Shown piece after piece: positions 5,716 through 26,807 of a stretch of DNA of 40,633 bases. The notes beneath the pieces were generated by a model, which was given only the letters and a program-made list of their open reading frames with translations, did no database searches and was not told the DNA's origin. The DNA lies in the NCBI GenBank assembly GCA_002269645.1, contig NIVC01004609.1:1-40633 (forward strand), read 5' to 3'. Source of the DNA: Macrostomum lignano (Eukaryota). Each line of letters starts with the position of its first letter. Position 1 is the stretch's first letter. Position numbers and translations under genes: made by a program.

Positions 5716-6575
5716 ACAGAGACTTATGTAGAGTTAGAGTGACAGACTTATGAAAAGTTAGAGTGACAGACTTATGGAGAGTTAAAGTGACAGACTTATG
5801 GATAGTTAAAGTGACAGACTTATGGATAGTAAAAGTGACAGATTTATGGAGAGTTGGAGTGACAGATTCAATGAGGGTCAGACTGTGTGACAGATTTAAT
5901 GAGGGTCAGAGAGTGTGACAGATTCAATGAGGGTCAGAGAGTGTGACAGATTCAATAAGGGTTAGAGAGTGTGACAGATTCAATGAGGGTCAGAGTGTGT
6001 GACAGATTCAATGAGGGTCAGACTGTGTGACAGATTTAATGAGGGTCAGAGTGTGTGACAGATTCAATGAGGGTCAGAGTGTGTGACAGATTCAATGAGG
6101 GTCAGAGTGTGTGACAGATTCAATGAGGGTCAGAGAGTGTGACAGATTTAATGAGGGTCAGAGAGTGTGACAGATTCAATGAGGGTCAGAGTGTGTGACA
6201 GATTCAATAAGGGTCAGAGTGTGTGACAGATTCAATGAGGGTCAGAGTGTGTGACAGATTCAATGAGGGTCAGAGTGTGTGACAGATTTAATGAGGGTCA
6301 GAGAGTGTGACAGATTTAATGAGGGTTAGAGAGTGTGACAGATTTAATGAAGGTCAGAGAGTGTGACAGATTCAATGAGGGTCAGAGAGTGTGACAGATT
6401 CAATGAGGGTCAGAAAGTGTGACAGATTCAATGAGGGTTAGAGAGTGTGACAGATTTAATGAGGGTCAGAGAGTGTGACAGATTCAATGAGGGTCAGAGA
6501 GTGTGACAGATTCAATGAGGGTCAGAAAGTGTGACAGATTCAATGAGGGTTAGAGAGTGTGACAGATTCAATAGA
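5716..6575. repeat. Compound minisatellite: 24-bp units (GTGACAGACTTATGGAGAGTTAGA) grading into 28-bp units (GTGTGACAGATTCAATGAGGGTCAGAGA)
   Basis: Periods of 24 and 28 nt read directly; both share a GTGACAGA core. Confidence 0.95.
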
Positions 6576-6812: not shown

Positions 6813-7368
6813 TAACTCCGCCATTGAGCCATAGCATCTCAGCAACTCCCCATTGAGCCATGGCATCTCAGCAACTCCCCATTGAGCCATGGCTTCTCAG
6901 CAACCCACCATCGAGCCATGGCATCTCAGCAACTCCCCATTGAGCCATGGCTTCTCAGCAACTCACCATCGATCCAGGGCATCTCAGCAACTCCCCATTG
7001 AGCCATGGCATCTCAGCAACTCCCCATTGAGCCATGGTATCTCAGCAACTCACCATCGAGCCATGGCATCTCAGCAACTCCCCATTGAGCCATGGCATCT
7101 CAGCAACTCCCCATTGAGCCAGGGCATCTCAGCAACTCCCCATTGAACCATGGCATCTCAGCAACTCCCCATTGAGCCATGGTATCTCAGCAACTCCCCA
7201 TTGAGCCATGGTATCTCAGCAACTCCCCATTGAGCCATGGCTTCTCAGCAACTCACCATCGAGCTATGGTATCTCAGCAACTCCCCATTGAGCCATGGTA
7301 TCTCAGCAACTCCCCATTGAGCCATGGCATCTCAGCAACTCCCCATTGAGCCATGGCAGCTCAGCAAC
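6813..7368. repeat. 29-bp minisatellite (GAGCCATGGCATCTCAGCAACTCCCCATT)n, ~19 copies, intronic
   Basis: The 29-nt period is directly visible. Confidence 0.97.
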
Positions 7369-8630: not shown

Positions 8631-8896
8631 AGCTAACGATACGTGTGCTTTTCTTCTGCGTGAAAGCTGGAAAGTATTGCCAATAGAGTCAAATTAAAAA
8701 AAAACTGGTTACATTCCTAGCTTAGCGTGTCATACTAAAAGTGCGGAGCACGCGGATTTCAGAGTTACTAAAGTAAAAGTCAATGTGCGAATAGCATGCT
8801 TTGCTAGTGTGCGCTCAGAGAGGAAGTGTAAGAAAGTGAGACATAAATGTTGAATTATTTAATTAAAAACATGAAAACGTATTTGCTTGTCTCCAA

Positions 8897-9288
8897 AACC
8901 ATAGACAATCTACCATTATCTGCCTCCAGAACCATAGACACAATCTACCATTGTCTGCCTCCAAAACCATAGACACATTCTACCATTGTCTGCCTCCAAA
9001 ACCATAGACACAATCGACCATTGTCTGCCTCCAAAACCATAGACACAATCGACCATTGTCTGCCTCCAAAACCATAGACACAATCGACCATTGTCTGCCT
9101 CCAAAACCATAGACAAAATCGACCATTGTCTGCCTCCAAAACCATAGACACAATCGACCATTGTCTGCCTCCAAAACCATAGACAAAATCGACCATTGTC
9201 TGCCTCCAAAACCATAGACAAAATCGACCATTGTCTGCCTCCAAAACCATAGACAAAATCGACCATTGTTCCCTTTTGTCTATGGTTT
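8897..9288. repeat. 35-bp minisatellite (CCAAAACCATAGACACAATCGACCATTGTCTGCCT)n, ~11 copies, capped by an inverted core copy
   Basis: 35-nt period. TTTTGTCTATGGTTT at 9274-9288 is the reverse complement of the unit core. The same unit recurs at 10256-10330. Confidence 0.93.
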
Positions 9289-10791: not shown

Positions 10792-12040
10792 CTATTGAAG
10801 CTTGGTATGAAAACACGATCTGTAACACTTTAGGATCAGTTGTTTTGTGTAGAACTCTCGCTGGTTGAGTGCAAAAATAATGCATATACAAAGCCTCTGA
10901 TGACTCGGACATCCTGCTCCAGCGTACCAACCAAGCGCGATCATGTTTGCAGCCGTGAGCAGGATGTAGCTGATGAAGCAGATTGCATTCTTGTGACTCG
11001 CTATAAACCTTCCAAGTCTTCTGATCGTTGAGGGCGCATCCGAGGGCGCAGATGAGGGAAGCGCTTTCAGAGCGGAAATGAAGGTGAACGCGATGAGGAT
11101 GAGCATTTGTATCATGAGGAACAGACCGACTAGCGGGATCGTGTTCATGGACTTCGGAGCCGACTGGGACGCGATCAGCACGTATAGAAGAATTATTAGT
11201 CATGGACATGATGATGGCAATGGACAGGTTCACCGGGTCGCTCTTGTCACCAGCCAGGAACATGATGCTTGCGAGCAGCGACAGCAGCTCGAACGGGACA
11301 ATCACCAGCACAGCGTAGTACATCCACCTGCGCTTCAGGTGGAATTGTAAATCCACCATATAAAAGTTGAAGTCAAGTGACTTTTCTTTGGACTGTTCAC
11401 CAGTCACTTTCTCCAGATCCCACTCGCCGACCCGGGAAAGTTCCAGCCCATCGTACGTGGAGCTGTTGTAGTAAACAGACACCGATAGGTTAAAATGCGT
11501 GACGTCGGACGTTCCTGTGCTGACTTGAATAGCGCACAGCTGACTGTCGAAGGGGAAGTATCTCCCATCGATGGCGCATGCGAACTGCACCACTGCGAAT
11601 GTGTAAATGCTAGCTTCTCCGGTTGGAAACAATAGAGCATCGGCGAACATTTCGCCCTTGGAGTTGAGGAACTCGACGTCCGGTAGCCAGAGGCTGTTTC
11701 TGTGGAGACGCAGCTGGTGCGGGCTGCCCGGCGATGACGAGTTCCAGGCGAGTCGAGGGTCAGTCCAGGAAATCCAAATCCAGCCAGAGAACTCCAGCAG
11801 CTCCTTTTCGTCCAGGCCGTAGATGGTGTTCAGATAAATCAACACCCTGACGTCTGTTTGGTAGCCGAAGTAGCTCGGAGACAGCAAGACGTGGCACTGC
11901 GGCAGCGCGTGCGGTCTGATGGACTCCGCCAGTGCGCGGCACGCAGGCACGTCAGCGTTTGTTGCCGGGTCGATGGCGCTTGAGCGCATGATACTGTGAA
12001 CTAGTAGAAGCAGAGGCAGAATACATTTACAGGTTCGCAT
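10792..12040 (-). pseudogene. Cys-loop LGIC-like paralog A; 10-nt insertion in M2 (11189-11198) causes a frameshift
   Basis: Signal peptide, WTDPRLAW, WLPD, C-x13-C loop (CAIDGRYFPFDSQLC), GEW and M1 are present. AGAATTATTA is inserted relative to the other five copies. M3/M4 continue in ORF 10792-11181. There is also an in-frame 7-aa deletion (DLRNTKF) versus B. Confidence 0.85.
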
Positions 12041-12339
12041 CTTGCTGGCGCTCGTCTCGCAGTATGCAATAAAAATTTAGAAATTTGAGGCCTTCAGCCG
12101 CCAACAGAGTTCGACTAGCGTTTTTTACACTTACTCAGATTAATAATAATATTGCTTGGTACAATTGCAGTTTATTTCATAGTTACTACTCATAGTAAGC
12201 CTAAAGACAACATCCATACAACATTAAAATAAATGACACTTTCCTGTCATTAAGCAATGTAATTGACAGCTTCTTATTATCTGAACACTCGGATAGCAAA
12301 TGCAGAGTTTTCTGGTCCCGAATATTGAGGACGTTCTAC

Positions 12340-12760
12340 ATCTCTACCGATAGAAGAGTTCGAACCATGAACTGGGTTGCGACACAATGAGGACTGCGAG
12401 ACCAAAGATCCCTTAGGAGAACAGCTGACCTGCTCAAAGTGCCATGTGGGGAGTAGAAAGTGAAGTTCAGTTACTTTTTAAGTGCAGTTGGAACTTTTAC
12501 TGTATCGTGCTTCTCCGTGATAAACTTGAACAGGAAATCCCAGATAAAGTTCCGAATTAAAAAAACCTTACTGCAGAAGATTAAATATTTTACCTAATGA
12601 CTCAAGAAGACATGATGGAAATGCTACCTAGAAAACTGCATCAAAGACATGACACAAGCTAGAAAGCAACTTCATGAGGCTTCAGATTGTTACAGAAGAA
12701 AACAAGCATGAATAACACGAGATTTCACTCCCGTTAGGTCGAAAAGTATTTTTATTCACT
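12340..12760 (+). mobile_element. Non-LTR retrotransposon (LINE) 3' remnant
   Basis: Clearly homologous to 24115-24490 (e.g. ACAATGAGGA.TGCGAGACCAAAGATCCCTTA; CCGTGATAAACTTGAACAG), which encodes a LINE C-terminal Cys/His motif. Confidence 0.6.
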
Positions 12761-13369
12761 AGCTTTTTGAATTTTTGCCTCGAGTAATATCATTAAATAC
12801 CAGTACCCTCAGCGTGTTTTCAATAATAATCGTAGAAATAGTAATAATATTAGTATATTTAGATTTTGACTTAGCTGCAGGGCTGTCCCGGAGGGGACAC
12901 AGCGGGAAGGCGCGGGCGCCCATTCCGCTAAGTATATTTAGATTAATAATAAGAATGTTAATGATGATGCTATTGTTACGTAAACTGCGCCCAACCTAGG
13001 ATGGTGCATGCTTAAATACAAATTACCTCAAAAACTAGAGGTTCTAGTTGATGGAATTTTCCAGAACGGCATCTGTGACACCCAGTTAAGCAAAAAACGA
13101 TGAGGCTGCGAATGAAGGGCAATTTCTAGCTATGGTTAGCCTTAAAATAGGCAGTTTGCTCTCCTGGCTACTATTTCTGTGTTTTTTGAAGGCTATTAGG
13201 CACGGGTCTATGAGAGTTTCCTGCAGGAAGTTTTTCCGCGGAGGTTTTCCCGCAGGGTTTTTCCAATTGGATTTGAAATCTAGTCTTAGGCTAGTTCTAA
13301 TCTAGTCCAGCATTGTCTATAGACTGGATTTGACTTGAGATTCCGACAGGAAAAACCATGCGGGGAAAT

Positions 13370-13620
13370 CTCGGCGGGGAAACCTCCAGCGGGGAAACCT
13401 CCAGCGGGGAAACCTCCAGCGGGGAAACCTCCAGCGGGGAAACCTCCAGCGGGAAACCTCCAGCGCGGAAACCTCCAGCGGGGAAACCTCCAGCGGGAAA
13501 CCTTCAGCGCGGAAACCTCCAGCGGGGAAACCTCCAGCGGGGAAACCTCCAGCGGGGAAACCTCCAGCGGGGAAACCTCCAGCGGGAAAACCTCCAGCGG
13601 GGAAACCTCCAGCGGGGAAA
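13370..13620. repeat. 14-15-bp tandem repeat (GCGGGGAAACCTCCA)n
   Basis: About 17 directly visible units. Confidence 0.95.
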
Positions 13621-14069
13621 TATCGGCGGGCAAGCCTCGGCGGGAAAACTTCCGGCGGGAAATTCTCGTGTTCCCTTAGGCACATCTTTTAGACCCAGGG
13701 TCAGTTGACTTATCTTCTCAACATACGCATTAGCGATAATAGCTGCTTTAATGAGGCTGCACTATTGCCTTGAAGCACAATCGTAGTAATGTGGAATCTC
13801 TACATAAATGTACACATGATGAATCTTTATGAAAATAAAAAAAATTAATTATATCACGTTCTACGAAATAAATGAGGAAGCATTGAGGAAAATAGCGTTG
13901 TGAAAAGAACCCATGGCATAGTAATCCAGCGCATAGTGAATCTTGGCTGAAGGGATGAGATGTTTTTCTCTTAATTTCAAAGTCAAGAGATGTTGCAGCG
14001 TCTGATTCACAGCCAAACCATAGAACAATAAAACCAGTTGGTTCTTGCGCGCAAAGAAATGAATTGAAG

Positions 14070-15224
14070 TCAGATGTATACAAACACAATAATATTAATG
14101 ATAGTAAGGCTGATGTAGCTTATAAAGCAGACAACATTTTTGTGCTTTGACAGAAACAAAATCAGTTTCTTCAGTTTAGATGGCGCCTCCGAGGTCGCAG
14201 ACGAATAAGTGACTTTTAGAGCAGCGATGAAGGTGAACGCGATGAGGATGAGCATCTGAGCCATGAGGAACAGGCCGACTAGCGGGATCGTGTTCATGGA
14301 CTTCGGAGCCGACTGGGACGCGATCAGCACGTACAGAGTCATGGACATGATGATGGCGATGGACAGGTTCACCGGGTCGCTCTTGTCACCAGCCAGGAAC
14401 ATGATGCTTGCGAGCAGCGACAGCAGCTCGAACGGGACAATCACCAGCACAGCGTAGTACATCCACTTGCGCTTCAGGTGGAACTTGATGTTGGCGACAT
14501 AAAGGCTGTCACCAGCGGCCACATATCGGGAAAGCTCATGAGTAACGCTTATCAGCTCCCACTCGCCGACCTGGTACAAATCCAGGCCCAGGTTCTCTGA
14601 TTTGTTGTAGCTGATAGACACCGACAATTTGAACCCGGAAGTGTCTGACGATATGGTGCCGAGTTGGGTGGCGCACAGCTGAGTGTCGAATGGGAAGTAT
14701 CTCACATCGATGGCGCAGGCAAACTGAACAACTGCGAATGTGTAAATGCCGACTTCCCCAGTAGGAAAAATTACTGCGTCAGTGAACTTGGTGTTTCGGA
14801 GGTCAAACATCTCGCCCTTCGAATTAAGGAAGCCAACGTCTGGTAGCCACACGCTGCCCCGGTCGACTCGCAAGTACTGTGGGCTGCCTGGTGCTGAAGA
14901 ATTCCAGGCCAGCCGAGGGTCAGTCCATGAAATCTGGAACCAAGCGGAGAACTCCAGCAGCTCCTTCTCGTCCAGGCCGTAGATAGTTTTCAGCAAGATG
15001 TGCACGCTGACGTTCGTTTGGTAGCCGAACTGGCTGGGGTACATCAACGTGTGGCACTGCGCCAGCGACTGCGGACCGATGGACTCCGACAGCGCTTGAC
15101 ACGCAGCAGTGGCCGCATCAGTGCTGGCTGCTGAGTTTGACTCTGAAACAGTCGCAAGCAAGAGCAGCACAGGCAGCAGTAATGTTGCTGTTGAAGACAT
15201 TTTGTTGCCACCGGGATGGTTCAT
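14070..15224 (-). CDS. Cys-loop ligand-gated ion channel-like subunit, paralog B (intact, intronless, non-alpha nAChR-like, minimal M3-M4 loop)
   Basis: 384-aa ORF with signal peptide, WTDPRLAW, WLPDV, Cys loop CAIDVRYFPFDTQLC (C-x13-C), VGEW, LKRK pre-M1 and four hydrophobic helices. The P..MNTIPLVG M2-M3 linker is nAChR-like. Confidence 0.93.
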   Translation of the reverse strand: MNHPGGNKMSSTATLLLPVLLLLATVSESNSAASTDAATAACQALSESIGPQSLAQCHTLMYPSQFGYQTNVSVHILLKTIYGLDEKELLEFSAWFQISWTDPRLAWNSSAPGSPQYLRVDRGSVWLPDVGFLNSKGEMFDLRNTKFTDAVIFPTGEVGIYTFAVVQFACAIDVRYFPFDTQLCATQLGTISSDTSGFKLSVSISYNKSENLGLDLYQVGEWELISVTHELSRYVAAGDSLYVANIKFHLKRKWMYYAVLVIVPFELLSLLASIMFLAGDKSDPVNLSIAIIMSMTLYVLIASQSAPKSMNTIPLVGLFLMAQMLILIAFTFIAALKVTYSSATSEAPSKLKKLILFLSKHKNVVCFISYISLTIINIIVFVYI

Positions 15225-15782
15225 ATGCTTATTAACGGTAGATAAGTATTGAACTCAAATATTTGCGTTTGTCGAGCTTTTATCTTGCGTCTTGTGAGAG
15301 TTTTTTGCTTTCCCGAGTTAATTCATGCTAAACTGCTCTGCTCTCAGTGCTATATATGGATAGAGATGAGGGATTAACGCGTTGGTTCTAAACTTTTATT
15401 TGCTGCATTTTCATCTCCACAAGCTTCCTCGAGAGGTTTGGCTTGGTAAAACATTTCCGCATTTCCATTTCAGAGCTGCAGATCTCGCTCTCGTTGTCAA
15501 GGTAAATAATTAACTGCATGCTGGTTGTTCTAGACTAGGGGGGGGGGCACTCAGCTCGTCACGGCTTGTTTCACCCATCAATTAATGACATTTCTATTGG
15601 CAAATAATGAGTCCTTAGTTTTCGCAGTATTTTTTAGTCTGCTGAGTACATCTATCTCCATGAACATTAAAGGACGATTCTCTATGGAATAGCCTTTTTT
15701 TCGCAGTTGCAAACCAGTTTTGCCCAATTGTCCAAATATATGGAGAATATGATTACATTGGATCAAATTCTGTTAATTCCCG

Positions 15783-16126
15783 ATAGTCAGTGGGCCGTAG
15801 CCTGGCCCGTGTCAGCGGTCCAGGTTCGATTCCAAGTGCAGTCACATTAATTTGGGGCTAAATTGGAATCGCGGCTTGGCTCTGCTCGTGCAATTAACGG
15901 CCTTGAGGGCCGACCCCAAGGCACAGTGAAGTGTACATGCCTAACGATAAATAAAGTTAGGGCCGCTGTACACTCCTGTGTGAGTGTGTGCCTGCGCGTA
16001 TGACTGTGTACGTATCCGCGCTTGTGTGCCTGCTCAGGGGAGTCGGCGGAATGGGCAGCAATGCCTCTCGCCGGTTGTGTGACAATGTCACTTAGGTGCA
16101 CACAGCGCCTGCCTCTAATAAAAATG
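15783..16126 (+). mobile_element. tRNA-derived SINE copy with a different head/middle but the same 3' body
   Basis: TAGTCAGTGG A-box-like element, GGTTCGATTCC B-box (15823-15833), and a shared body at 15970-16126 ending CCTGCCTCTAATAAAAA. Confidence 0.7.
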
Positions 16127-16449
16127 TTCCCAATAGTGGATAGTGGATTGAACTGAGTCTTCCCTTTGGGGACAGGCGGGGCTGGTGTATGTTCATGTTA
16201 TGTTAGTATAAATGACACGAGATATGAATTATGAACGGCGACAGAAAAGAGTTCCGGGCTTAACGATGAAGATCTGCTCAGGATGGCGCAGAGCTCATTC
16301 TCTCGTCATATATGATCCCAGTGTCTTAGCAATATTTGCACTGGCATCGGGTTCTGCTCTCAAGACACTAAATGCTACTGTCACAGTGTTCTTAGGACGA
16401 GTCTATTTGCCAAGTTTGGTTATGTCCAAATAACAGCTGTGTTGCGGCA

Positions 16450-17690
16450 GCCATCCGATCAAAAGAAATGCTCCGTTTGAATGGAGATGTCTTGTCAGGT
16501 CTGGTTAAAGTTCTTCAAGCAAAGACTATTGACAACTATAAAGAATTACTTGTTGAAAGGAGTACTTTTCTGTTCACTCACTGAACTCAATGCATACTTA
16601 TCTTCTACGCAATTTCCACTAGCTTTTACGGGATCACCTGCATTACAACTCATCATCTACTTTCCTACTTTTGCCGATATAAACTTAAAAGTATCAACTG
16701 AAAAGACGTGTTCCCAAGCCAAAACGTGTACACTCAAAGTGGCCGATTTTTTAAAGCTTTCTACTCATTTGGTGAGTAGTATGGATTTAAAATTCAGAGC
16801 AAGTGCCGCTCATATGAACCCAGTCATCATGCAGTGCGTCTTCGCTTTTCTATAGCTTTTTTCAAACCTGATTAATTATTTACGTCGCCCGAATAGGTAA
16901 AATATAAAGATTGCTATACACTGTAATTGATCGTATTACTCATTAAAGGTATTGCTCTATTGCCCACAGTGCCACCTGTTGAAGGTACCGACAGCGTCGG
17001 GGTGATGACGGAATTCTGGAGAGACTAGCTGAGGATGTCCAGCAGTTGAGGCTTGCCTACTGCCGAGGCTTGATCAGCGAACTCAGAGAAACTTGCACAG
17101 GGTGTCCATAGTCACCGGGTGCCACCCTGGAAGGATCCGCCTGAGTAAAGACCAGTGACCAAAGAAGTCAGAGCTGATGCAGAGATGTGCTGGTGAAATT
17201 TGGAGGCTTGGCAAGGCTGCGCTGAGGCGCAGCGCTGGTTGGCGCACAGGGCTGTATTGAATGCACTGGCGCTTATGAATATCTCGATGGTCCGGAGGGT
17301 TGGTGACTTGATTATCGTTTGCGAAGGTGCGCAAGAAAAAGTTAGCCGATGGTCTTGACTTTTGACGCAGCAAAAACTCTTACGGCTCTTACGGCTTGTA
17401 CATCTATTTCCACTGGATTCTGTTGCTAAGGTCCAAGCATAGCGCTCGTAATTTTTAATCCATTTACCATATGCCAATTATTCAATGTGCTGGTCAACAG
17501 TCAGCCTCATCCATAGCAGACTGCGCCAAAGCAAACCTACTGGTCAAACATGCAGCAGTTTTCAAACACACGCCCACAGACTACAGGGCCAGATCACATG
17601 TTACAAACATCAGAGCCACCAAGCTGAACAAGTGGGCAGAAGCTGAACTACTGTTAGATGATTTTCTACGGCAAACTTAATGAATAATGT
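16450..17690 (+). mobile_element. Possible highly degenerate LINE RT/C-terminal remnant
   Basis: Fragmentary motifs only: NLKVSTEKT (RT-like), VTGCHPG, and CAGQQSASSIADC (C-terminal Cys-motif-like), with many stops. Confidence 0.25.
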
Positions 17691-17744
17691 GACAAATAGG
17701 AAATTTAAATATTTGACCAGCGAGCACTGTGAATATAATTATAG

Positions 17745-18538
17745 CAGGGGTTGGCAAACCTTTTAACGTCAAGGGCCAGATAGAGAACCCAGAGACTGAC
17801 TGTGGGCCCGGAGGAGGGGAGAGAGGAGAGGAAATAAAGAAGAGAGAAGGGAGGTAAGAGAAAGGAGAGGTGAGATAATAAAGGAGAAGAGAGGAGTGGA
17901 GAAGGAGGAGAGAGAAAAGAGAGGAGAGGAGGAGAGAAAATGAGTGAGAAGAGAGGAGAGAGAGGAGAGAGAAGAGAGGAGAGAGAAGAGAGGAGAGAGA
18001 AGAGGAGAGGAGGAGAGGAGATGAGGAAGGGAGGAGAGGAGATGAGGAGAGGAGGAGAGGAGATGAGAAGAGAGGAGAAGAGAGAAGATGAGAGGAGAGA
18101 GGAGAGGGAAGACGAGACGAGAGGAGAGGAGAGAGGAGAGAAGATATGATAGAGAAGAGAAGAGAGGTGGGGAGAGATGAGAGGAGAGAGAAGAGAACAT
18201 AGGAGAGAGGAAGAGAGTAGAGAGGAGATTAGAGAGAAGAGTGCTGAGAAGCGATATAAACATTGGGTGGGCCGGATTGCTTGTGGGCCGGATTGCTTGT
18301 GACGGATTTCTTGATTGCTTGTGGGCCGGATTGCTTGTGACGGATTTCTTGATTGCTTGTGGGCCGGATTGCTTGTGACGGATTTCTTGATTGCTTGTGA
18401 GCCGGATTGCTTGTGACGGATTGCTTGATTGCTTGTGGGCCGGATGCAGCACATTGTAAAGTTTCAAAGGACCCGAGGGTCGGATAGAGAGGCTCTGCGG
18501 GCCGCATGTTGCCCGACATGCAGAGTTTGCCGACCCTG
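17745..18538. mobile_element. hAT/Charlie-type non-autonomous DNA transposon (MITE) with internal GA microsatellite and 38-bp tandem repeats
   Basis: Left end CAGGGGTTGGCAAAC (17745) and right end GTTTGCCGACCCTG (18525-18538) form imperfect TIRs. Subterminal GGGCCG(G/C)A motifs are present. No intact 8-bp TSD is visible. Confidence 0.7.
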
Positions 18539-18636
18539 CATGAATTAGAGACTGGGAGAGTAATGGCTGGCGTACGTGCTTGTCATCAAGCAGAAAACCA
18601 GAATGAAAGTCTTCAGCTTCATTTAGCTTCAGCTTC

Positions 18637-19781
18637 ATGTCTTCACTGGCGCAACTCCGGATTCTTCTGAGCCACGCAGTCTTGCTGGTATCAGCCAGCA
18701 CTGAATGGGCTGCCGACGCTGAAGTGGCCGCCTGTCGCGCTCTGTCGGAGTCCATCGGTGCGCAGTCGCGTCAAGCTGTCACCGAAGCACTGTGGCTACG
18801 ATACAAATATTGAGTTGTTGTCTTGATGCTCCATGTGAAGACTATATATACATGTACGGCCAGGACGAGAAGGAGCTGGAGGAGTTCACCGGCTGGATTC
18901 AGATGACCTGGACTGACCCCCCGGCTAGCCTGGAGCTCAACGGAAAGTCCACTGAAGCAGCTACGGGTGGAGAGGAACAGCTTGTGGTTGCCGGATGCTG
19001 GATTCTGGAATACGCGGGAAAGCTGAGAGCTTTATGACGCACGAAATGCAAAGTTCCAGGACGCCACAATGTTCCCCACTGGTAAGGGTAAGATCTATAT
19101 CTTCTTTGTAGTCCGATTTGCCTGCATCATACAAGTCGCCAAGTTTCCATTCGACGCGCAAGTCTGCTCAAGTTTCCAAGTCTGCTCCATTCAAATCGGC
19201 ACGATATCTTCGGACTTGACGGTGTTCAATATTACAGTGCAAAATATATTTAAAGAGAATATTGATTCGGTACAGTCTTCGTCAACTGTCAGTGAATGGG
19301 ACTTGAAAAATATTTCTCAAACGGACATGATCGACTCTATTGGTGGGCAGCAATTCAAAAGTGTGAGGCTTCTCCTTCAACTGGAGCGAAGGTTCATGTA
19401 TTATTGGTGATTGTCTCGTTCCAGCTGCTGTCGCTGCTCGCAAGCATCATGTTCCTGGCTGGTGACAAGAGCGACTCGGTGAACCTGTCCATCGCCATCA
19501 TCATGTCCATGACTCTGTACGTGCTGATCGCGTCCCAGTCGGCTCCGAAGTCCATCCTCATCGCGTTCACCTTCATCGCAGCCGCTCAGAACAAAACAGA
19601 TAGATCAGCTGCTCACAAACCGGAGGCTGAGCATAGAAAGCGAGGCTGGAAGACAGTTCTATTGCAACACAGAAACGTGGCTGCTACATTGCAGCAAGTG
19701 TCTGCAATGCATGCGCATTTTTGTTTATATCACCAAGTAGCTATTAAGGACAATTTTAACTCCAAAACTTTCTGCAATTAG
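18637..19781 (+). pseudogene. Cys-loop LGIC-like paralog C, degraded pseudogene
   Basis: ATG 18637 MSSLAQLRILLSHAVLLV...AACRALSESIG; then YGQDEKELEEFTGWIQMTWTDP, FACIIQVAKFPFDAQVC, SEWDL and the pore cassette lie in several frames, with multiple frameshifts and stops. A 48-nt deletion removes MNTIPLVGLFLMAQML. Confidence 0.88.
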
Positions 19782-20602
19782 TGGTGAATGTTTCAATGAG
19801 AAATCATGGTGACAGAATTTTGCAAAACAAATGCTTCAACTCAGTCAACTCAATCTTTGAAGTTTGGAAATAATTTTTCGAATGCACGACTCCAATGGCT
19901 TATTTATACTTTAGCTAATATGCTCGTAGTTAGCGCGCATCTCATTTGTACTGTTTCTTAACTTAGTACAAAGTCGAATAAAGCATTAACTAACTAATAT
20001 TGCAATAATACACGTTTTACTGATACGACCCCCATTAGTAAAATAACTAATTCATGCAAGGACCCGTCAGAACCTGCTGCATGTTTTCTTATGTAACAGA
20101 TAAAGTTTATTTGTTCACGTAAAATGGTAAAGAGCTGCTTGTTAATTTGCAGCAGTTTTTTAGATCAAAATAGATCAAGATCAAAATACTATACTGTAAT
20201 TGCAAACTTTGATTGGTTGATCGGACACGTGGGCCATATTGGAACAATTGAAACAATATAACATGCAAAGAACCAGCTATTACAGCACAGCGATGACAAT
20301 CAACGTAGGTAGGATTTACTGCACGCGGTGCATACTCTCGTAGTGTTGTATTTTTGGGTAAATGAACGAACCGAGAATTCAATTGTCGGTGCAATCAAGC
20401 TTAAATTGTAGTGGTATAGTAGTACTCGTAGTAGTTGACGGCACAGTAGCAAATACTTGCTAAATGGCTGAGAGTTCCTCAATAGTACTATTTCAAGTCA
20501 AACAGTTCCTAAAAAAGTGAATATCGATATCCGATCTCACTTTTGTCAGAAATTGACAAACTTTTTGCTCTATTTAAGAAAAAATCGTGGCTAAGAGTGC
20601 AG

Positions 20603-21752
20603 CTACTTATCGGCGCTCAGGTGGGCGGGCCAGACATAGATGAAAACGAGCGCGTTCACCCCGCTGAGCAGCAGGTAGGCGCAGCTGCACACAACAGCCC
20701 GGTGGCGAAACAAGAAGGTCCAGCAGCTTTTCGTCACCTTTGCACTTTCACGACTCGCAACCTGCTGTCTGCCAGGGAAAGCAGCGATGAAGGTGAACGC
20801 GATGAGGATGAGCATCTGAGCCATGAGGAACAGACCGACTAGCGGGATCGTGTTCATGGACTTCGGAGCCGACTGGGACGCGATCAGCACGTACAGAGTC
20901 ATGGACATGATGATGGCGATGGACAGGTTCACCGGGTCGCTCTTGTCACCAGCCAGGAACATGATGCTTGCGAGCAGCGACAGCAGCTCGAACGGGAAAA
21001 TCACCAGCACAGCGTAGTACATCCACCTGCGCTTCAGGTGGAACTGGATGTTGACTACCGGGTAGATAGCGCCATTTGCAGTAAGAAAGTATGAGTTATG
21101 ATCAACAGACTGCAGGATCCATTCGCCAACTTGGTACAGCTCGAGTCCACTGTCTTCCGAGTAGTTGTAGCTCACCCTTGCCGAAAAGTTGAGTGCAGCT
21201 ACGTCAGATGTAACTGTAGCCAGTTGGGTTGCGCAAACCTGGCTGTCAAACGGGAAGGATCTCACATCAAGGGCGCATGCGAATTGGACAACGCAAAATG
21301 CGTAAATAAACGCTTCTCCTGATGCACTAAGAACTACGTCAGAGAATTTCGCGTTTCTAATGTCGAACATCTCGCCCTTGGAATTCAGAAAGCCGATGTC
21401 AGGAAGCCACAGACTGTTCCTGTCGATGCGCATGTACCGTGGACTGCCTCTAGCTGATGAGTTCCAGGCCAGCCGAGGGTCGGTCCATGCCAGCTCAATC
21501 CAGGCAGAGAACTCCAGCAGCTCCTTGTCGTCCAGACCGTAGATGGTCTTCAGTAGAATTTTAACAGCGACGCTGTTTTCGTAGCCGAAATGGCTCGGCG
21601 ACAGCATGACGTGGCACTGCGGCAGCGACTGCGGTCCGATGGACTCGGCCAGTGAGCGGCACGCGGCTACGTTGACGTTCGAGGCCGGATCGATGGTGGC
21701 TCAGAAAACAGTGCAACAGAATGAATCTGGCTGGCTGAATCAGGTGCTGCAT
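20603..21752 (-). CDS. Cys-loop LGIC-like paralog D; signal peptide (ATG 21752) is out of frame with the open 366-codon main frame 21700-20603 (pseudogene or sequencing error)
   Basis: The main frame has ACRSLAESIGPQSLPQCH, WTDPRLAW, CALDVRSFPFDSQVC, GEW and M1-M4. There is an in-frame TGA at 21701-21703, and MQHLIQPARFILLHCFLS lies in the adjacent frame. Confidence 0.8.
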
Positions 21753-22328
21753 TCTACAGTAAGTATCTTCAGAACGTCTGACAATTGGATTTCTCTAAAT
21801 GGATCGAATGCAAAGCTGCTGGGAAGTGGGAAGCTTCGGTAGCTTTAAACGGTGACAAATATAGTTAAGAGTTTGCCGCCCAGCAGATTCGCACCAATCA
21901 GGAAACTTTGCCCTCCTCATCTTCTATTCAGTGCTTCGCTTTTATCAAGCGTTCTTAATATGCTACTTAACTTAAACCATAAAAGTAGCTTCATCACTCT
22001 TCACCACTTGCATTGCTACTAATAGTAGTAGAAACTATTGTTTCAAAACTGTTCTACAGCGTATTGTACAAAAAATTAAAGCCTTCCATATTGCGAAAAT
22101 CCCATTTAAAGTGAGTTATAAGCTATACAACTTGAAGATTTGAGATTGGCTCTAACCTCCTTTGCTAGATAGAAAGAAAAAGGATGCTGGATAGTTTTTG
22201 CGTCAACTGGCTTCGCAGCGAATCAGAGCTAACGAATTTATACGAATAAAAATCAGGTCTCAAGGCAAGGAAACTCCAAGGTTATAAATTTTTTTAAAGT
22301 CGTGGATATTCAGTAACAAATCGTAGCC

Positions 22329-23488
22329 ATGCTCACCTGTCTTAGGTCTGTAATCTTTCGACTGTTGCTGGTAATGGGGAGCAGCGCTTTTTTACGCTTG
22401 ATCGCCATCAGTCCAGCCTCCAACGCAGACAAGGCAGCATGCCGGGCTCTGGCGGAGTCCATCGGGCCGCAGTCGCTGCCGCAGTGCCACGTCATACTGT
22501 CTCCCAAAAACTTTGGCTACAATACGAACGTCGAGATAGTCATATCGATCAAGACCATTTACGGACTGGGAGAGAACAAGCTGCTGGAGTGGTCCGGTTG
22601 GACCTTCATCAGCTGGACTGACCCAAGACTGGCTCGGAACGTATCCGAAAGCCAATTGGATCAACTGCGAGTGGAGCGGAACAGCCTGTGGCTGCCAGAC
22701 ATTGGCTTCTGGAACAGCAAGGAGGAGAGCTTGTACGACATTCGAAATTCTGGCCTCTTGGAAGTGACGGTATTTCCCTCCGGCCTCGTGTACGCCTACG
22801 TGTACCTGGTGATTCGGTCTGCATGCGCAGTTGACATCAGACTATTTCCATTTGATCAGCAGCTTTGCACTATAGAGTTGGGAACCATCACTTCTGACTC
22901 GAGTGTCTTCAATTACACACTCTTAAGCACCTTATCGATCAACAAGATAGACGGAGTGTCCTACCAAGTTGGGGAGTGGAATTTGAACGAGCTATCGCAG
23001 CACAATCGCACTAATGTTATTAATGGTCAATCGTTTCCTTGCACCGAGATCAAGTTCCACCTGACGCGCAGGTGGATGTACTACGCTGTGCTGGTGATTG
23101 TCCCGTTCGAGCTGCTGTCGCTGCTCGCAAGCATCATGTTCCTGGCTGGTGACAAGAGCGACCCGGTGAACCTGTCCATCGCCATCATCATGTCCATGAC
23201 TCTGTACGTGCTGATCGCGTCCCAGTCGCTCCGAAGTCCATGAACACGATCCCGCTAGTCGGTCTGTTCCTCATGGCTCAGATGCTCATCCTCATCGCGT
23301 TCACCTTCCTGACCGTTGTTTCTCCAAGGCAATCAAGGCGAAGTGAACGAAGCCCTAAGATCTTTTTCGACTGCGTTGAGTTCTGTATTAAACAGAAAAA
23401 TAGTATTTGTTTTATCAGCTACCTTGTTGTCAGTGGACTTAACGCAGCAGTGTTTCTGTTTCTTCTACCATATCAAGACAGAAAATAA
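22329..23488 (+). CDS. Cys-loop LGIC-like paralog E; 1-nt deletion at ~23228 (GG to G) splits the ORF (sequencing error or recent pseudogene)
   Basis: ORF 22329-23243 has signal, ECD with CAVDIRLFPFDQQLC, M1 and M2; ORF 23240-23488 has M3 and M4. E reads CAGTCGCTCCG where the other copies read CAGTCGGCTCCG. Confidence 0.85.
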
Positions 23489-23699
23489 GATAACGAGAAT
23501 GATTAATATCAAAGATTTGGTTTGGCAACAAAATAAATTTGACCATCTTTAAATTTAAACGATAGATCTTGTGCACTTGTTAATCTAATCACGAAGAGGC
23601 CCATAGATGCCCACGTAGTTTCATAATGCTTTTAGAAGTATTAGTTGGCCTTGGAATAACTCACTCTAGTACAGTCGAAGTTGAAAGCATGTTCTTGAC

Positions 23700-24490
23700 G
23701 CCTCTGAGGCCTGGGGGCTGTTGTTTTCTAGAACCTGGGCTCGAAGTCTAATCGAGAGGATCAATTTCAGATCTTGCAAATCATTCTCCAAGGCTGACTG
23801 CAATACCCAAAATTGAATTATTCAGTACCGGGCCTCACTAGCAAATCACTCAGACTCCATCATCTCGAGACAGTGAGGTTGGCATTACAGCTAAAATGAA
23901 TACTGAAATAATGCGAAATTTTCAAAATGGACGAGTAACGAAATCAATCAGAACACACAAAGCTACTCGAAGTAGTTTTGAACTAGAATTTACGAGGCAC
24001 TGAAAGCAAAGAGTAGAGAACTCTGAAAATTTAACTCACTACTCAGCCGAAAAGCGTCCTAGAAATTTGCAATCCAGAATTGAAGCGCACCCTGTCACAG
24101 TTTAGATTAGCAAACCATAAACTGGCCTGCGAAACAATGAGGATTGCGAGACCAAAGATCCCTTACGAGAACAGGACCTGCCCAAAGTGCCATATGGGGG
24201 GTAGAATGTGAAGTTCACTTCCTGTTTAAGTGCTGTTGGAACTTTTTAGTGGCTCCCCGTGATAAACTTGAACAGTTGAAAGTCTCGGATAAAGTTTCGG
24301 ATTTTAGAAACCATACGGCAGAAGAAAAAGTATTTTACCGAATGACTCAAGTAGATAGAGGCATAATGGAAATTTTTGCAAGATTATCAAAGACAAGCTA
24401 GAATGCAACTGCCCTGAGGCTTCAGATTGCCTTGATAAGAGTACTTTGTGCACTAGACTTCACTCCCCCGTTACGTCCAGAAAAATTATT
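23700..24490 (+). mobile_element. Non-LTR retrotransposon (LINE) 3' remnant
   Basis: Translates (with shifts) EAWG...IERINFRSCK and PELKRTLSQFRLANHKLACETMR...PYENRTCPKCHM-GVECEVHFLFKC, the typical FR...H.L..E...R.C..C...E.E.HFL..C C-terminal motif of LINE ORF2. Confidence 0.7.
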
Positions 24491-25271
24491 GACTGCTTTT
24501 TGCATTCATTATTTCGTTGTATTTTGCAACTCAACGGTTTCACTACAAGTTGGACACACAAAGCAGCTCAATATTTGCCAATTGCATCCATGGATTTCTG
24601 AGAATGTTTGCTGCAGACAACGCTAGGCTAATGTTTAACAATCCACTTTCAGAATTAATCAATAAATGTATTTGTCGCTATACAGTCCAATTTATATTGT
24701 TGGCGAAGACCCCAGCTGTTCAGTGGTGAAATTCATAAAGAATTGCATCTCAAGATATTTACACTTGCACTAATCATTTGCTAGCTAAGCCGCCTTTAAT
24801 GTGTTGATTAAATTGAATTGAACTGTGTTGTCTGGCACTCTAGCAGCTTCATCAGTGAGTGCAGTTTCTATGGCGGCTGCTTAAATATTTAGTCACGCAG
24901 TTGCTAAGCCATTATTTGCTCGAGAAGCAACAAGTGTACTTCTGTTATTTGCTTTTTGTCAAGCGTTCGGTTATTACTGATAATCAAATTTAACACGAAT
25001 GCAAAATAGCTATCAGCAAGTCAAAACCCGTTGCAATAAAGAATAATTTTATTTGAGAAACTACGAAAACATGATAACTTTTCAGAGTCGCTTTACTTTG
25101 AAGGAGGGTTACCATATTGAATTCAATGTTTGTAGAACGTCAATTATATATACTCTATTCTATGCGAATAATCCCAGCACTATCAATGTGCCATCTTTCC
25201 CAAACATAAAGCCGTAAAATTATTTGTGCATCTGCTCAAGCTGAAAGGCCAAATAATTAAAAGTTAGGGGG

Positions 25272-25386: not shown

Positions 25387-25389
25387 AAA

Positions 25390-25485: not shown

Positions 25486-25625
25486 ATTATGAAAAATTTT
25501 TGTGTCGTGATGTCTGTGTTATACATCTTAAGAATCCGTCTTGCAGTGATTAAACGACTCAATGAAACTTTCTGAGATGCCAAGGCTCATGGCTACTCAT
25601 GCGAAAGTAAATAACAGCAACGCTC

Positions 25626-26807
25626 TTAAGAGTCCAAATGAGGCCATAAAACCAAAAACGCGACAGAGTTTAGTCCGCTAGTCGACAGGTACAGAAATAA
25701 GAGGACTAGGTTCCTTTTTCCGTCAAGACCCTGCCAGTATTGGCTCAAAGTTGAGCTCGTCCCCTCATTGAAATTTATCAAACGCTTTTGATCGACGGCC
25801 GCAATGAAAGTGAAAACGATGAGAATGAGCATTTGTATCATGAGGAACAGACCGACTAGCGGGATCGTATTCATGGACTTCGGAGCCGACTGGGACGCGA
25901 TCAGCACGTACAGAGTCATGGACATGATGATGGCGATGGACAGGTTCACCGGGTCGCTCTTGTCACCAGCCAGGAACATGATGCTTGCGAGCAGCGACAG
26001 CAGCTCGAACGGGACAATCACCAGCACAGCGTAGTACATCCACTTGCGCTTCAGGTGAATGTTTATTTTGTGAAAGGGAAAGCTCTCTTCAATACTGTGC
26101 AATACAGCCTGTTCTTGCTTAACTCCCTCCAGCTCCCATTCACCGACACCGAACAGTCCGATGTCATTGCTCATGAGACGGGCAGACAGCGATATGTTTA
26201 ACTCGTCCGAATATGACACAACCGTGCCGACTCCAACTGAACAGACCTGCCGGTCGAAAGGAAACTTTCGCACATTCAGGACGCATCCAAACTTTATCAC
26301 CAGGTAAATCGGAAGAACCACCGTTCCCGTGCTGTACACTGAAACCGAAATAAATTTCGAATTACGGAGATCAAACATATCGTTGTCCTTTCCATTCCAG
26401 AAACCAATGTCCGGCAGCCAGAGACTGTCTCTGTCGATAACTAGATGGTCTACGGCCTTGTCGGACGAGTTCCAGGCCAGCCGAGGGTCGGTCCACGTCA
26501 GATCAATCCATGCGGACCACTCCAACAGCTCCTTCTCGTCCAAGCCGTACACAGCCATCAATTCGATTGTAACCGAGACGCTGGTGTCGTAGCCGAAACT
26601 CTTTGGCGATAGTATCGCGTGACACTGCGGCAGCGACTGCGGCCCGATGGACTCCGCCAGTGCGCGGCACGCGGCCACGTCAGCATTGGCTGCCGAGTCG
26701 ATGGCGGCCGAGTGGGTAGCTGCGCTGGCTACCAGAAGCAGCACAGCTGACAGTGGCAACTGTCCAATGCAGCTCTGCCATGCTGCTGGAAGGGAAATTA
26801 GTAACAA
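25626..26807 (-). CDS. Cys-loop LGIC-like paralog F; open frame intact from signal peptide to M4, but no in-frame ATG before the signal peptide
   Basis: 393-codon frame (TTG start in the ORF track) with ACRALAESIGPQSLPQCH, WTDPRLAW, CVLNVRKFPFDRQVC, GEW and M1-M4. A strong 3' splice site ends at 26786/26783, and an out-of-frame ATG sits at 26781. Confidence 0.85.
   Translation of the reverse strand: MLLISLPAAWQSCIGQLPLSAVLLLVASAATHSAAIDSAANADVAACRALAESIGPQSLPQCHAILSPKSFGYDTSVSVTIELMAVYGLDEKELLEWSAWIDLTWTDPRLAWNSSDKAVDHLVIDRDSLWLPDIGFWNGKDNDMFDLRNSKFISVSVYSTGTVVLPIYLVIKFGCVLNVRKFPFDRQVCSVGVGTVVSYSDELNISLSARLMSNDIGLFGVGEWELEGVKQEQAVLHSIEESFPFHKINIHLKRKWMYYAVLVIVPFELLSLLASIMFLAGDKSDPVNLSIAIIMSMTLYVLIASQSAPKSMNTIPLVGLFLMIQMLILIVFTFIAAVDQKRLINFNEGTSSTLSQYWQGLDGKRNLVLLFLYLSTSGLNSVAFLVLWPHLDS

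What the first reader, a model, noticed from the sequence alone, without database searches (positions are those of the whole stretch)
14480..15060. Acetylcholine-binding aromatic box is absent and ligand-facing positions are hypervariable
Seen, by alignment to alpha7-type loops: the loop A Tyr is L (A, B, D) or W (E, F) in WLPDxxF(L/W)N. The loop B Trp (GSW) is replaced by G/I/V (STGTS, GTISS, ATVTS, GTITS, GTVVS). Loop C has no vicinal CC or flanking Tyr pair and differs in every copy (EQSKEKSLDFNF, ELSRYVAAGDSL, NSYFLTANGAI, HNRTNVINGQS, EQAVLHSIEES). The loop D Trp is kept, but the residue two positions later is W/Q/E/F/D. Established: these residues form the cation-pi ACh site. Inference: ACh-insensitive receptors, each with a different pocket.
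Basis: partly seen in the sequence, partly recalled or inferred. Interest (0 to 1): 0.72.

Follow-up and report, generated by a model that had tools for sequence, protein, structure and literature searches.

The report
Flatworm nicotinic-like receptor genes without acetylcholine site
The region encodes the ligand-binding domain of one of six tandem, intronless nicotinic-receptor-like channel genes, probably from a Macrostomum-type flatworm, that have lost the key acetylcholine-binding tryptophan; this resembles other orphan invertebrate receptors and is interesting but not unprecedented.

Summary
Window 14480-15060 (minus strand) is the extracellular domain of copy B. It is the only clearly intact member of a six-copy tandem array of intronless Cys-loop receptor genes. 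The nearest relative is a Macrostomum lignano protein (47% identity), followed by a platyhelminth-specific nAChR-like clade.

The loop-B Trp is G/I/V, the loop-A Tyr is L/L/L/W/W, there is no Cys-Cys pair or TyrC1, and the loop-D Trp is kept.

"Aromatic box absent" is overstated. The TyrC2 column is aromatic in 4 of 5 copies (F/L/Y/F/F), and B has a Tyr one residue later.

"Hypervariable" is only weakly supported. Pocket positions are modestly more variable than the rest of the domain (0.66 versus 0.48, p about 0.03). The binding loops have omega 0.3-0.6. Loop C is about 1, but dS is saturated.

The subunits cannot form a canonical ACh site on their own principal face. They could still be non-alpha-type partners like muscle gamma/epsilon subunits, which also lack the loop-B Trp.

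Five of the six copies carry frame, stop or start defects. A 257-nt pore segment is homogenised by gene conversion. I file it as a new member of a known kind.

The parts
14070..15224 (-). Copy B: intact intronless Cys-loop receptor gene (384 aa plus stop). It has a signal peptide, an extracellular domain, M1-M4 and a very short M3-M4 loop.
   Evidence: ORF. Pfam PF02931 at 3.4e-32; PF02932 is below the cut-off at 21.1 bits. Human alpha7 nAChR at 7e-34. AF2 pLDDT 81 and pTM 0.72. Foldseek top hits are alpha7 and other nAChR chains.
14940..14942 (-). Loop D Trp (B W95, alpha7 W55), invariant in all copies. The residue two positions later (14934-14936) is W/Q/E/F/D.
14823..14849 (-). Loop A, WLPDVGFLN. 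The alpha7 Y93 position is L133 (14826-14828); it is L in A, B, D and W in E, F.
14736..14780 (-). Loop E strands. The alpha7 L109/Q117/L119 positions are V/G/Y in B. The L119 position is Tyr in 4 of 5 copies.
14673..14717 (-). Cys-loop, CAIDVRYFPFDTQLC (C-x13-C with FPFD).
14634..14666 (-). Loop B, QLGTISSDTSG. The alpha7 W149 position is I191 (14652-14654); it is G/I/V/I/V across copies. There is a two-residue insertion after it relative to alpha7.
14565..14621 (-). Loop F region: variable (0.62) and modelled with low confidence.
14496..14543 (-). Loop C hairpin, THELSRYVAAGDSLYV. There is no Cys-Cys and it is 2 residues shorter than in alpha7. It is the most variable segment (0.83). The TyrC2 column is L241 followed by Y242 in B, and F/Y/F/F in the other copies.
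14227..14483 (-). Pre-M1 to M3 gene-conversion tract of copy B, directly abutting the finding. The same tract lies at 11078-11344, 19375-19576, 20787-21043, 23055-23310 and 25804-26060.
   Evidence: 95-99% nucleotide identity, against 50-71% in the extracellular domain. dS 0.008-0.16 against 0.9 or more.
10939..12040 (-). Copy A. The extracellular domain is intact but has an 8-residue deletion. A 10-nt insertion (TAATAATTCT, 11189-11198) in M2 shifts the frame.
18661..19703 (+). Copy C: degraded pseudogene with several stops and frameshifts. It still carries the conversion tract.
20603..21700 (-). Copy D. The frame is open from the mature N-terminus to the stop. There is an in-frame TGA upstream, and the only upstream ATG is in another frame, so no signal peptide is in frame.
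22329..23488 (+). Copy E. It has an ATG, a signal peptide and an intact extracellular domain. A 1-nt deletion (GG to G, at about 23227/23228) in the M2-M3 linker shifts the frame.
25626..26807 (-). Copy F. The reading frame is full length, but there is no in-frame ATG before the signal-like segment.

Best explanation
The region is the ligand-binding domain of copy B, the one clearly intact gene in a six-copy tandem array of intronless, compact (about 385 aa) nicotinic-receptor-like Cys-loop subunits. The array belongs to a platyhelminth-specific clade and probably comes from a Macrostomum-type free-living flatworm.

Shown:
- The fold, the Cys-loop, the pre-M1 Arg, the M2-M3 Pro and an acidic -1' residue are all in place. 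The proteins therefore look like working cation-channel subunits.
- On the principal face, the cation-pi Trp of loop B, TyrC1 and the Cys-Cys pair are replaced by small aliphatic or polar residues. TyrA is Leu or Trp.
- The loop-D Trp, an aromatic at TyrC2 and a Tyr at the alpha7 L119 position are kept.
- The extracellular domains are old duplicates (dS saturated). They are under overall purifying selection with relaxed loops. The pore segment is kept identical by gene conversion.

Inferred:
- The orthosteric pocket has been remodelled from an aromatic cage into a mostly aliphatic or hydrophobic, copy-specific pocket.
- Homomers, or heteromers made only of these subunits, would then be gated by something other than acetylcholine.
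- This would resemble orphan lophotrochozoan nAChR-like receptors such as Alpo4, and the cephalopod chemotactile receptors.
For: - Family and fold: Pfam PF02931 at 3e-32; alpha7 is the best solved relative by sequence and by fold.
- Loss of TrpB, TyrA, TyrC1 and Cys-Cys in all copies, seen in three independent alignments.
- The TrpB loss is derived within the clade. Neodermatan relatives keep W and intermediate relatives have F, while this group and the M. lignano protein have I/V/G.
- Gating and pore motifs are conserved, and -1' is Asp.
- Scaffold omega is 0.16-0.37, so the domains evolved as functional genes.
- Any two copies share only 2-6 of 14 pocket columns, against 45-68% identity elsewhere.
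- Precedent: octopus chemotactile receptors are intronless nAChR derivatives with a hydrophobic pocket under diversifying selection (PMC11526382; bioRxiv 10.1101/2025.03.03.641191).
- Precedent: orphan Alpo4 (PMC10338036).
- Precedent: intronless tandem nAChR expansions in molluscs (PMC6896357).
Against: - No ligand, expression or assembly data exist.
- The same residue pattern occurs in non-alpha subunits of ACh-gated heteromers.
- Pocket variability is only slightly above the background of a fast-evolving domain. It is not significant within strands.
- Omega is below 1 for the loops, and the loop-C value is uninformative because dS is saturated.
- Five of six copies carry lesions in this assembly.
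- The shared pore has unusual 9' Met and 0' Pro residues, whose effect on function is unknown.
Confidence: 0.55

Rival explanations
1. They are non-alpha-type (complementary or structural) subunits. They co-assemble with an alpha-type subunit encoded elsewhere. ACh binds at the interface between the alpha principal face and the complementary face of these subunits, which retains the loop-D Trp. The variable complementary-face residues tune pharmacology, as beta2/beta4 or gamma/delta/epsilon do in vertebrates.
For: - The loop-D Trp is invariant, and the alpha7 L119 position is Tyr in 4 of 5 copies.
- Muscle gamma/epsilon subunits have Q and a delta-like subunit has L at the loop-B Trp position. 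They lack Cys-Cys, and gamma/epsilon have E at the loop-A Tyr position.
- Many of the best word-index hits are non-alpha subunits: beta4, gamma, delta and epsilon.
Against: - No alpha-type gene is in the window.
- No member of the whole platyhelminth clade has Cys-Cys or a loop-A Tyr. The clade therefore looks like an independent receptor type rather than a partner set.
- The complementary-face positions homologous to Q57, L109 and Q117 are among the most variable (0.9-1.0).
- The identical transmembrane domains fit assembly with each other.
- The M3-M4 loop is far shorter than in known nAChR subunits.
Confidence: 0.25
2. The array is mostly a decaying set of retrogene-derived duplicates. The loss of binding residues and the loop variability reflect relaxed constraint rather than new ligand specificities, and few or none of the copies make a working receptor.
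For: - A has a 10-nt insertion, C has many stops, D has a stop or frameshift in the signal peptide, E has a 1-nt deletion, and F has no in-frame ATG.
- Loop C omega is about 1.
- The pore has non-canonical 9' Met and 0' Pro residues.
- The conversion tract also reaches the dead copy C.
Against: - Scaffold omega is 0.16-0.37 across saturated dS, so there was long purifying selection on the extracellular domains.
- All gating motifs are intact in five copies.
- Extracellular-domain frames of about 210 codons remain open in A, B, D, E and F.
- The single-base lesions in D, E and F could be long-read assembly errors.
- An M. lignano relative with the same loop pattern is annotated from an independent assembly.
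Confidence: 0.15

Closest known systems
Macrostomum lignano Neur_chan_LBD domain-containing protein (UniRef A0A1I8I4U5 / A0A1I8HYE3 / A0A1I8HUS3)
   Same: It is the closest relative found (47% identity over the extracellular domain). It has the same N-terminal CRALA...CH motif, loop A WIPDVGFWN, loop B GGISSD (Ile in place of Trp), no Cys-Cys, and Phe at the C2 column.
   Different: Only an extracellular-domain fragment is on record and it is uncharacterised. Its M1 differs from the homogenised M1 of this array.
Platyhelminth nAChR-like clade with the APKSM/APRSM M2-M3 motif (Fasciola THD26242.1, Paragonimus, Schistosoma, Clonorchis, Dicrocoelium, Cichlidogyrus)
   Same: 33-37% identity. The shared M2-M3 motif, -1' Asp, absence of Cys-Cys, absence of a loop-A Tyr, loop-D Trp and C2 aromatic are all in common.
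   Different: The neodermatan members keep the loop-B Trp and a canonical 9' Leu. Many have very long intracellular loops (up to more than 800 aa).
Cephalopod chemotactile receptors (octopus CRT1 and relatives)
   Same: They are nAChR-derived pentameric cation channels encoded by intronless genes. They do not bind ACh. Their pocket is remodelled and hydrophobic, with pocket residues diverging between paralogues (PMC11526382; bioRxiv 2025.03.03.641191).
   Different: This is not the same clade: no cephalopod sequence is among the closest hits. Positive selection, sensory expression and ligands are demonstrated for chemotactile receptors but not here. A residue-level comparison could not be made.
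Alpo4, orphan nAChR-like receptor of Alvinella pompejana (PDB 8BX5 etc.)
   Same: It is a lophotrochozoan nAChR-like orphan without the loop-C Cys-Cys and with a Met ring in the pore. It matches copy B at 1e-26 (PMC10338036).
   Different: Alpo4 keeps the full aromatic set (F103, W159, Y199, Y205, W65), including the loop-B Trp. The present genes do not.
Vertebrate muscle nAChR gamma/delta/epsilon (non-alpha) subunits
   Same: They lack Cys-Cys, lack the loop-B Trp (Q or L) and the loop-A Tyr (E in gamma/epsilon), and keep the loop-D Trp.
   Different: They have long M3-M4 loops and many introns, are single-copy genes, and are obligate partners of alpha1. Identity is about 25%.
Intronless tandem nAChR expansions in molluscs (Jiao et al. 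2019)
   Same: These are lineage-specific expansions of nAChR-like genes by retroposition followed by tandem duplication (PMC6896357).
   Different: The phylum differs. That paper reported intronless nAChR genes only in molluscs among the species it compared. No pore-restricted gene conversion is described in the passages I read.

Membership tests
Cys-loop / pentameric ligand-gated ion channel superfamily | Neurotransmitter-gated ion-channel ligand-binding domain | tested here: met
   PF02931 at E 3e-32 to 2e-26 in five copies.
Cys-loop / pentameric ligand-gated ion channel superfamily | C-x13-C Cys-loop containing FPFD | tested here: met
   CAIDVRYFPFDTQLC at 14673-14717. C170, P178, F179, D180 and C184 are invariant.
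Cys-loop / pentameric ligand-gated ion channel superfamily | Four transmembrane helices with a pore-lining M2 | tested here: met
   The AF2 model has helices at 254-278, 284-305, 315-335 and 362-383. M1-M3 align to alpha7. The PF02932 score is below the curated cut-off (21 versus 28 bits), because the M3-M4 loop is very short.
nAChR alpha-type (agonist-binding) subunit | Vicinal Cys-Cys at the tip of loop C | tested here: not met
   Absent in all copies and in the whole platyhelminth clade.
nAChR alpha-type (agonist-binding) subunit | Loop B Trp (cation-pi partner, alpha7 W149) | tested here: not met
   G/I/V/I/V here, against W in 22 of 33 other family members.
nAChR alpha-type (agonist-binding) subunit | Loop A Tyr (Y93) and loop C TyrC1 (Y188) | tested here: not met
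   Y93 is replaced by L/L/L/W/W. The Y188 column is K/V/T/V/H, or S/A/A/I/S in the alternative register.
nAChR alpha-type (agonist-binding) subunit | Loop C TyrC2 (Y195) | tested here: inconclusive
   The column is F/L/Y/F/F, and B has a Tyr at the next residue. The register is uncertain by one residue because the hairpin is 2 residues shorter.
nAChR non-alpha (complementary) subunit | Loop D Trp present, and Cys-Cys absent | tested here: met
   W95 is invariant and there is no Cys-Cys.
nAChR non-alpha (complementary) subunit | Co-assembles with an alpha subunit to form an ACh site | not testable with these tools
   This needs co-expression or biochemistry. No alpha-type gene is in the window.
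Cephalopod chemotactile receptors | Membership of the cephalopod chemotactile-receptor clade | tested here: not met
   The closest relatives are platyhelminth proteins, and no cephalopod protein is among the closest hits.
Cephalopod chemotactile receptors | Pocket residues under positive or diversifying selection | tested here: inconclusive
   Loops have omega 0.3-0.6. Loop C is about 1 with saturated dS. Only five sequences were available.
Cephalopod chemotactile receptors | Intronless genes derived from nAChRs | tested here: met
   Single uninterrupted ORFs, six copies within 16 kb. Intronless chemotactile-receptor genes are reported in PMC11526382.
Cephalopod chemotactile receptors | Gated by poorly soluble hydrophobic ligands; expressed in sensory cells | not testable with these tools
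   This needs electrophysiology and expression mapping.
Platyhelminth nAChR-like clade | APKSM/APRSM M2-M3 motif, acidic -1' residue, no Cys-Cys, no loop-A Tyr, loop-D Trp | tested here: met
   Clade alignment. The best identities (33-47%) are all to platyhelminth or unnamed Logan sequences.

The most novel reading that the evidence does not exclude
A free-living flatworm lineage may have converted nicotinic-receptor genes into a small family of non-cholinergic, possibly chemosensory, ligand-gated channels, independently of cephalopods. The family would evolve in a modular way: gene conversion keeps one common pore and assembly module identical in every copy, while the ligand-binding domains stay outside the conversion tract and are free to diversify.
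Probability: 0.2. Interest if true: 0.7.

Novelty: new member of a known kind. Interest (0 to 1): 0.4.

Why it matters
If these subunits are functional and not gated by ACh, they would be a second, independent case of nicotinic receptors being turned into receptors for other ligands, after the cephalopod chemotactile receptors. Macrostomum is a tractable laboratory flatworm with RNAi, transgenesis and single-cell atlases, so the idea could be tested.

The sharp contrast between a homogenised pore (dS about 0.01-0.15) and saturated extracellular domains is a clean natural example of modular evolution in a channel family.

The array's relatives include uncharacterised nAChR-like channels of parasitic flukes. 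These keep the loop-B Trp but lack Cys-Cys, and they may be of pharmacological interest.

As it stands, this is a sequence-level inference about an orphan family, and only one copy is certainly intact.

Tried and rejected
1. Exact-match look-up of copy B in public assemblies found nothing on record. The source organism is inferred only from the closest relative.
2. Word-index homologue searches with B and with a family profile found only two family-like proteins, both from unnamed Logan assemblies. They did not return the M. lignano protein. The exhaustive search was needed to find it.
3. A homologue search with a neighbouring ORF (35235-35963), meant to pin down the species, gave no hit. Pfam on the flanking ORFs gave only a C2 domain.
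4. I tried to retrieve octopus CRT1 from the PDB sequence list, using a divergent mollusc subunit as query, for a residue-level comparison. It was not among the 60 hits shown. The chemotactile-receptor comparison therefore rests on papers only.
5. The AF2 tool returns confidence and secondary structure but no coordinates, and pentamers cannot be modelled. I used the predicted hairpin turn (A237-G238) only as a register check.
6. Site-wise dN/dS (PAML M8) was not run. PAML is not available, only five sequences exist, and dS is 0.9 to saturated. I replaced it with regional Nei-Gojobori estimates, Fisher tests and amino-acid variability tests.
7. I rejected strong purifying selection as the cause of the identical transmembrane segment. 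Synonymous sites are also identical, and the dead copy C carries the tract too.
8. I rejected an anion channel. -1' is Asp and there is no PAR motif.
Full report
WHAT IS THERE

The window looks like eukaryotic DNA packed with minisatellites. tblastn with the ORF at 14073-15224 finds six tandem copies of one gene between 10.9 and 26.8 kb.

| Copy | Coordinates | Strand |
|---|---|---|
| A | 10939-12040 | - |
| B | 14070-15224 | - |
| C | 18661-19703 | + |
| D | 20603-21700 | - |
| E | 22329-23488 | + |
| F | 25626-26807 | - |

Each copy is a single uninterrupted reading frame with no introns.

Five copies match the Pfam neurotransmitter-gated ion-channel ligand-binding domain at E 3e-32 to 2e-26. 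The best solved relatives of B are human alpha7 and other nicotinic receptor chains, at E 7e-34 and about 21-28% identity.

An AlphaFold2 model of B, built from a 40-sequence alignment, has mean pLDDT 81 and pTM 0.72. It shows the expected beta-sandwich and four helices. Its best Foldseek matches are alpha7 and other nAChR structures.

The finding's coordinates, translated on the minus strand, give QCH...IKF. That is exactly the extracellular domain of copy B.

ORIGIN AND RELATIVES

No exact copy of B is on record. The exhaustive profile-free search gives a Macrostomum lignano protein as the closest relative, at 47% identity over the extracellular domain only. Next come unnamed intronless genes from Logan assemblies, at 33-38% identity. 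After those come nAChR-like proteins of flukes and a monogenean, at 33-37%. Everything else is at or below about 31%.

All of these relatives share an APKSM/APRSM motif in the M2-M3 linker and mostly an acidic -1' residue. None has a loop-C Cys-Cys pair or a loop-A Tyr. The array therefore belongs to a platyhelminth-specific nAChR-like clade. It most likely comes from a Macrostomum-type flatworm; this last point is inference.

CHECKING THE OBSERVATION

Three alignments agree: HMMER to alpha7, a 40-sequence MAFFT alignment, and a clade alignment.

| alpha7 position | A / B / D / E / F |
|---|---|
| Loop D W55 | W / W / W / W / W |
| Q57 | W / Q / E / F / D |
| Loop A Y93 | L / L / L / W / W |
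| Loop B W149 | G / I / V / I / V |
| TyrC1 (Y188) | no aromatic in any copy |
| Cys-Cys (C190-C191) | absent in every copy |

Two corrections are needed.

- The column that is Y in 24 and F in 6 of 33 other nAChR-family sequences (alpha7 Y195, TyrC2) is F/L/Y/F/F here.
- It is followed by Y/Y/P/P/P, compare alpha7 Y195-P196.
- B has Tyr at the next residue.
- The AF2 hairpin turn at A237-G238 fits either register within one residue.
- In addition, the alpha7 L119 position is Tyr in four copies, and loop A in E and F is Trp.

So two of the five box positions are retained, and a third is aromatic in two copies. What is truly and uniformly lost is the cation-pi Trp of loop B, TyrC1 and the Cys-Cys pair.

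Second, the loss of loop-A Tyr and of Cys-Cys is old and clade-wide. The loss of the loop-B Trp is derived: flukes keep W, intermediate relatives have F or L, and this group plus the M. lignano protein have I/V/G.

IS THE POCKET HYPERVARIABLE?

Variability is measured as the mean pairwise amino-acid difference among A, B, D, E and F.

| Set of columns | Variability |
|---|---|
| 14 alpha7-contact columns | 0.66 |
| Rest of the extracellular domain | 0.48 |
| Loop C | 0.83 |
| Loop E | 0.66 |
| Loop F | 0.62 |
| Loop B | 0.60 |
| Loop D | 0.51 |
| Cys-loop | 0.31 |
| Loop A | 0.20 |

- The pocket-versus-rest difference gives permutation p = 0.03.
- When split by the predicted secondary structure, pocket columns within strands are not significantly more variable than other strand columns (0.61 versus 0.55, p = 0.18).
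- Only the six non-strand pocket columns stand out (0.75 versus 0.40, p = 0.015).
- Any two copies share 2-6 of the 14 pocket residues, against 45-68% identity elsewhere. "Each copy has a different pocket" is therefore true at sequence level.

Nei-Gojobori estimates:

| Region | dS | dN | omega |
|---|---|---|---|
| Whole extracellular domain | 0.9 to saturated | 0.26-0.56 | 0.2-0.45 |
| Scaffold | - | - | 0.16-0.37 |
| Binding loops | - | - | 0.3-0.6 |
| Loop C | saturated | saturated | about 1 |

Nonsynonymous changes are enriched in the loops in some pairs (Fisher odds ratio 1.4-2.3; p 0.015-0.3). This is relaxed constraint in the loops, with loop C evolving near-neutrally or faster. Diversifying selection is neither shown nor excluded.

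STATE OF THE COPIES

Only B has an ATG, a signal peptide and an unbroken frame through M4.
- A has an 8-residue deletion in the extracellular domain and a 10-nt insertion in M2 (11189-11198).
- C has many stops.
- D has an in-frame stop upstream of the mature N-terminus, and its only ATG is in another frame.
- E has a 1-nt GG-to-G deletion in the M2-M3 linker.
- F has no in-frame ATG.

The single-base defects could be long-read assembly errors. The 10-nt insertion and copy C cannot be.

A NEIGHBOURING FEATURE THAT BEARS ON THE READING

A 257-nt segment from pre-M1 to M3 is 95-99% identical in nucleotides among A, B, D, E and F, and 92-94% identical to the pseudogene C. This compares with 50-71% in the extracellular domain and 34-64% downstream, and the boundaries are sharp.

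Synonymous divergence in the segment is 0.008-0.16, against 0.9 or more in the extracellular domain. Identity at synonymous sites, and in a dead copy, means gene conversion rather than protein-level constraint.

The upstream boundary in B (14483) abuts the finding. The most variable stretch, loop C and beta10, therefore sits directly next to the most uniform one.

All copies consequently share one pore. It has -1' Asp, which predicts cation selectivity. It also has a non-canonical 9' Met and 0' Pro.

HOW IT MOST LIKELY WORKS

Shown: these are nAChR-family channel subunits with intact gating motifs (Cys-loop FPFD, pre-M1 Arg, M2-M3 Pro, GEW) but without the principal-face residues that hold the quaternary ammonium of ACh.

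Inferred: receptors built only from these subunits would not be gated by ACh in the canonical way. Their pocket is now mostly aliphatic, with a retained loop-D Trp, a C2 aromatic and a loop-E Tyr, and it would take a different ligand. I put this at about 0.55.

The main rival (0.25) is that they are non-alpha-type partners. Muscle gamma/epsilon subunits have Q and a delta-like subunit has L at the loop-B position. They lack Cys-Cys and keep the loop-D Trp. That is the same signature, and receptors containing them are ACh-gated.

A second rival (0.15) is that the array is largely decaying and the loop changes are drift.

COMPARISON WITH WHAT IS KNOWN

- The closest functional analogy is the cephalopod chemotactile receptors. 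These are nAChR-derived, intronless and not gated by ACh, and have a hydrophobic pocket whose residues are under diversifying selection (PMC11526382; bioRxiv 10.1101/2025.03.03.641191). The present genes are not members of that clade.
- Alpo4 is another lophotrochozoan orphan without Cys-Cys, but it keeps the full aromatic set, including the loop-B Trp (PMC10338036).
- Intronless tandem nAChR expansions are documented in molluscs (PMC6896357).
- A micropublication on schistosome channels notes nAChR-like sequences with GDR or SDR at the selectivity position, which fits the fluke relatives seen here (PMC9874803).

VERDICT

This is a new member of a known kind: divergent, lineage-specific nAChR-like orphans. 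It has an attractive modular-evolution twist that lies just outside the finding's coordinates. Interest 0.4.

Noticed in passing
window 14227-14483 (B); also 11078-11344, 19375-19576, 20787-21043, 23055-23310, 25804-26060: A 257-nt segment from pre-M1 to M3 is 95-99% identical in nucleotides in all copies and about 93% identical in the pseudogene C. Its boundaries are sharp. dS is 0.008-0.16, against 0.9 or more in the extracellular domain. This is a gene-conversion tract that homogenises the pore while the ligand-binding domains stay divergent.
   Followed up: yes
window 14300-14400 (M2 of copy B) and the same tract in the other copies: The shared pore has Met at 9' where nearly all pLGICs have Leu, Pro at 0' where Lys or Arg is usual, and Asp at -1'. 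Relatives outside this array have 9' Leu and 0' Arg.
   Followed up: partly
window 10939-26807: Five of the six copies carry lesions. A has a 10-nt insertion at 11189-11198. C has multiple stops. D has an upstream in-frame TGA and no in-frame ATG. E has a 1-nt deletion near 23227. F has no in-frame ATG. Some of these may be assembly errors.
   Followed up: partly
window 15051-15101 (B) and the equivalent site in other copies: A conserved N-terminal motif, C-(R/Q)-(A/S)-L-(A/S)-E-S-I-(G/R)-P-(Q/H)-(S/A)-L-(P/A)-Q-C-H, has two Cys residues. It is also conserved in nucleotides (dS 0.15-0.56) and is present in the M. lignano relative. Its function is unknown.
   Followed up: partly
window 14076-14230 (B): The M3-M4 intracellular loop is only about 25 residues, against more than 80 in typical nAChR subunits. 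This region and M4 are highly divergent between copies (dN 0.4-1.3).
   Followed up: partly
window 403-1987, 5859-6572, 6814-7368, 8891-9269, 13360-13659, 32626-33324, 35752-39209: There are many long minisatellite arrays with periods of 15-35 bp. They include a 16-bp unit repeated about 99 times and another repeated about 216 times. These arrays generate the long spurious repeat ORFs in the ORF list.
   Followed up: partly
window 2001-3068 (-): A GC-rich 355-aa ORF contains a C2 domain (Pfam PF00168, E 3e-9). It is probably part of an unrelated neighbouring gene.
   Followed up: partly
window 35235-35963 (-) and 29701-30729 (+): Two further ORFs were noted: one with a Cys/His-rich C-terminal part, and one that is Gln-rich. 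Neither has a Pfam hit. A homologue search with the C-terminal part of the first gave no match.
   Followed up: partly
L001 210-1373 and L002 439-1683: Two Logan contigs (ERR14224704 and DRR639055) carry single-exon relatives of 387 and 414 aa, from unnamed organisms. They have the same compact architecture, Phe at the loop-B position and Trp in loop A.
   Followed up: partly
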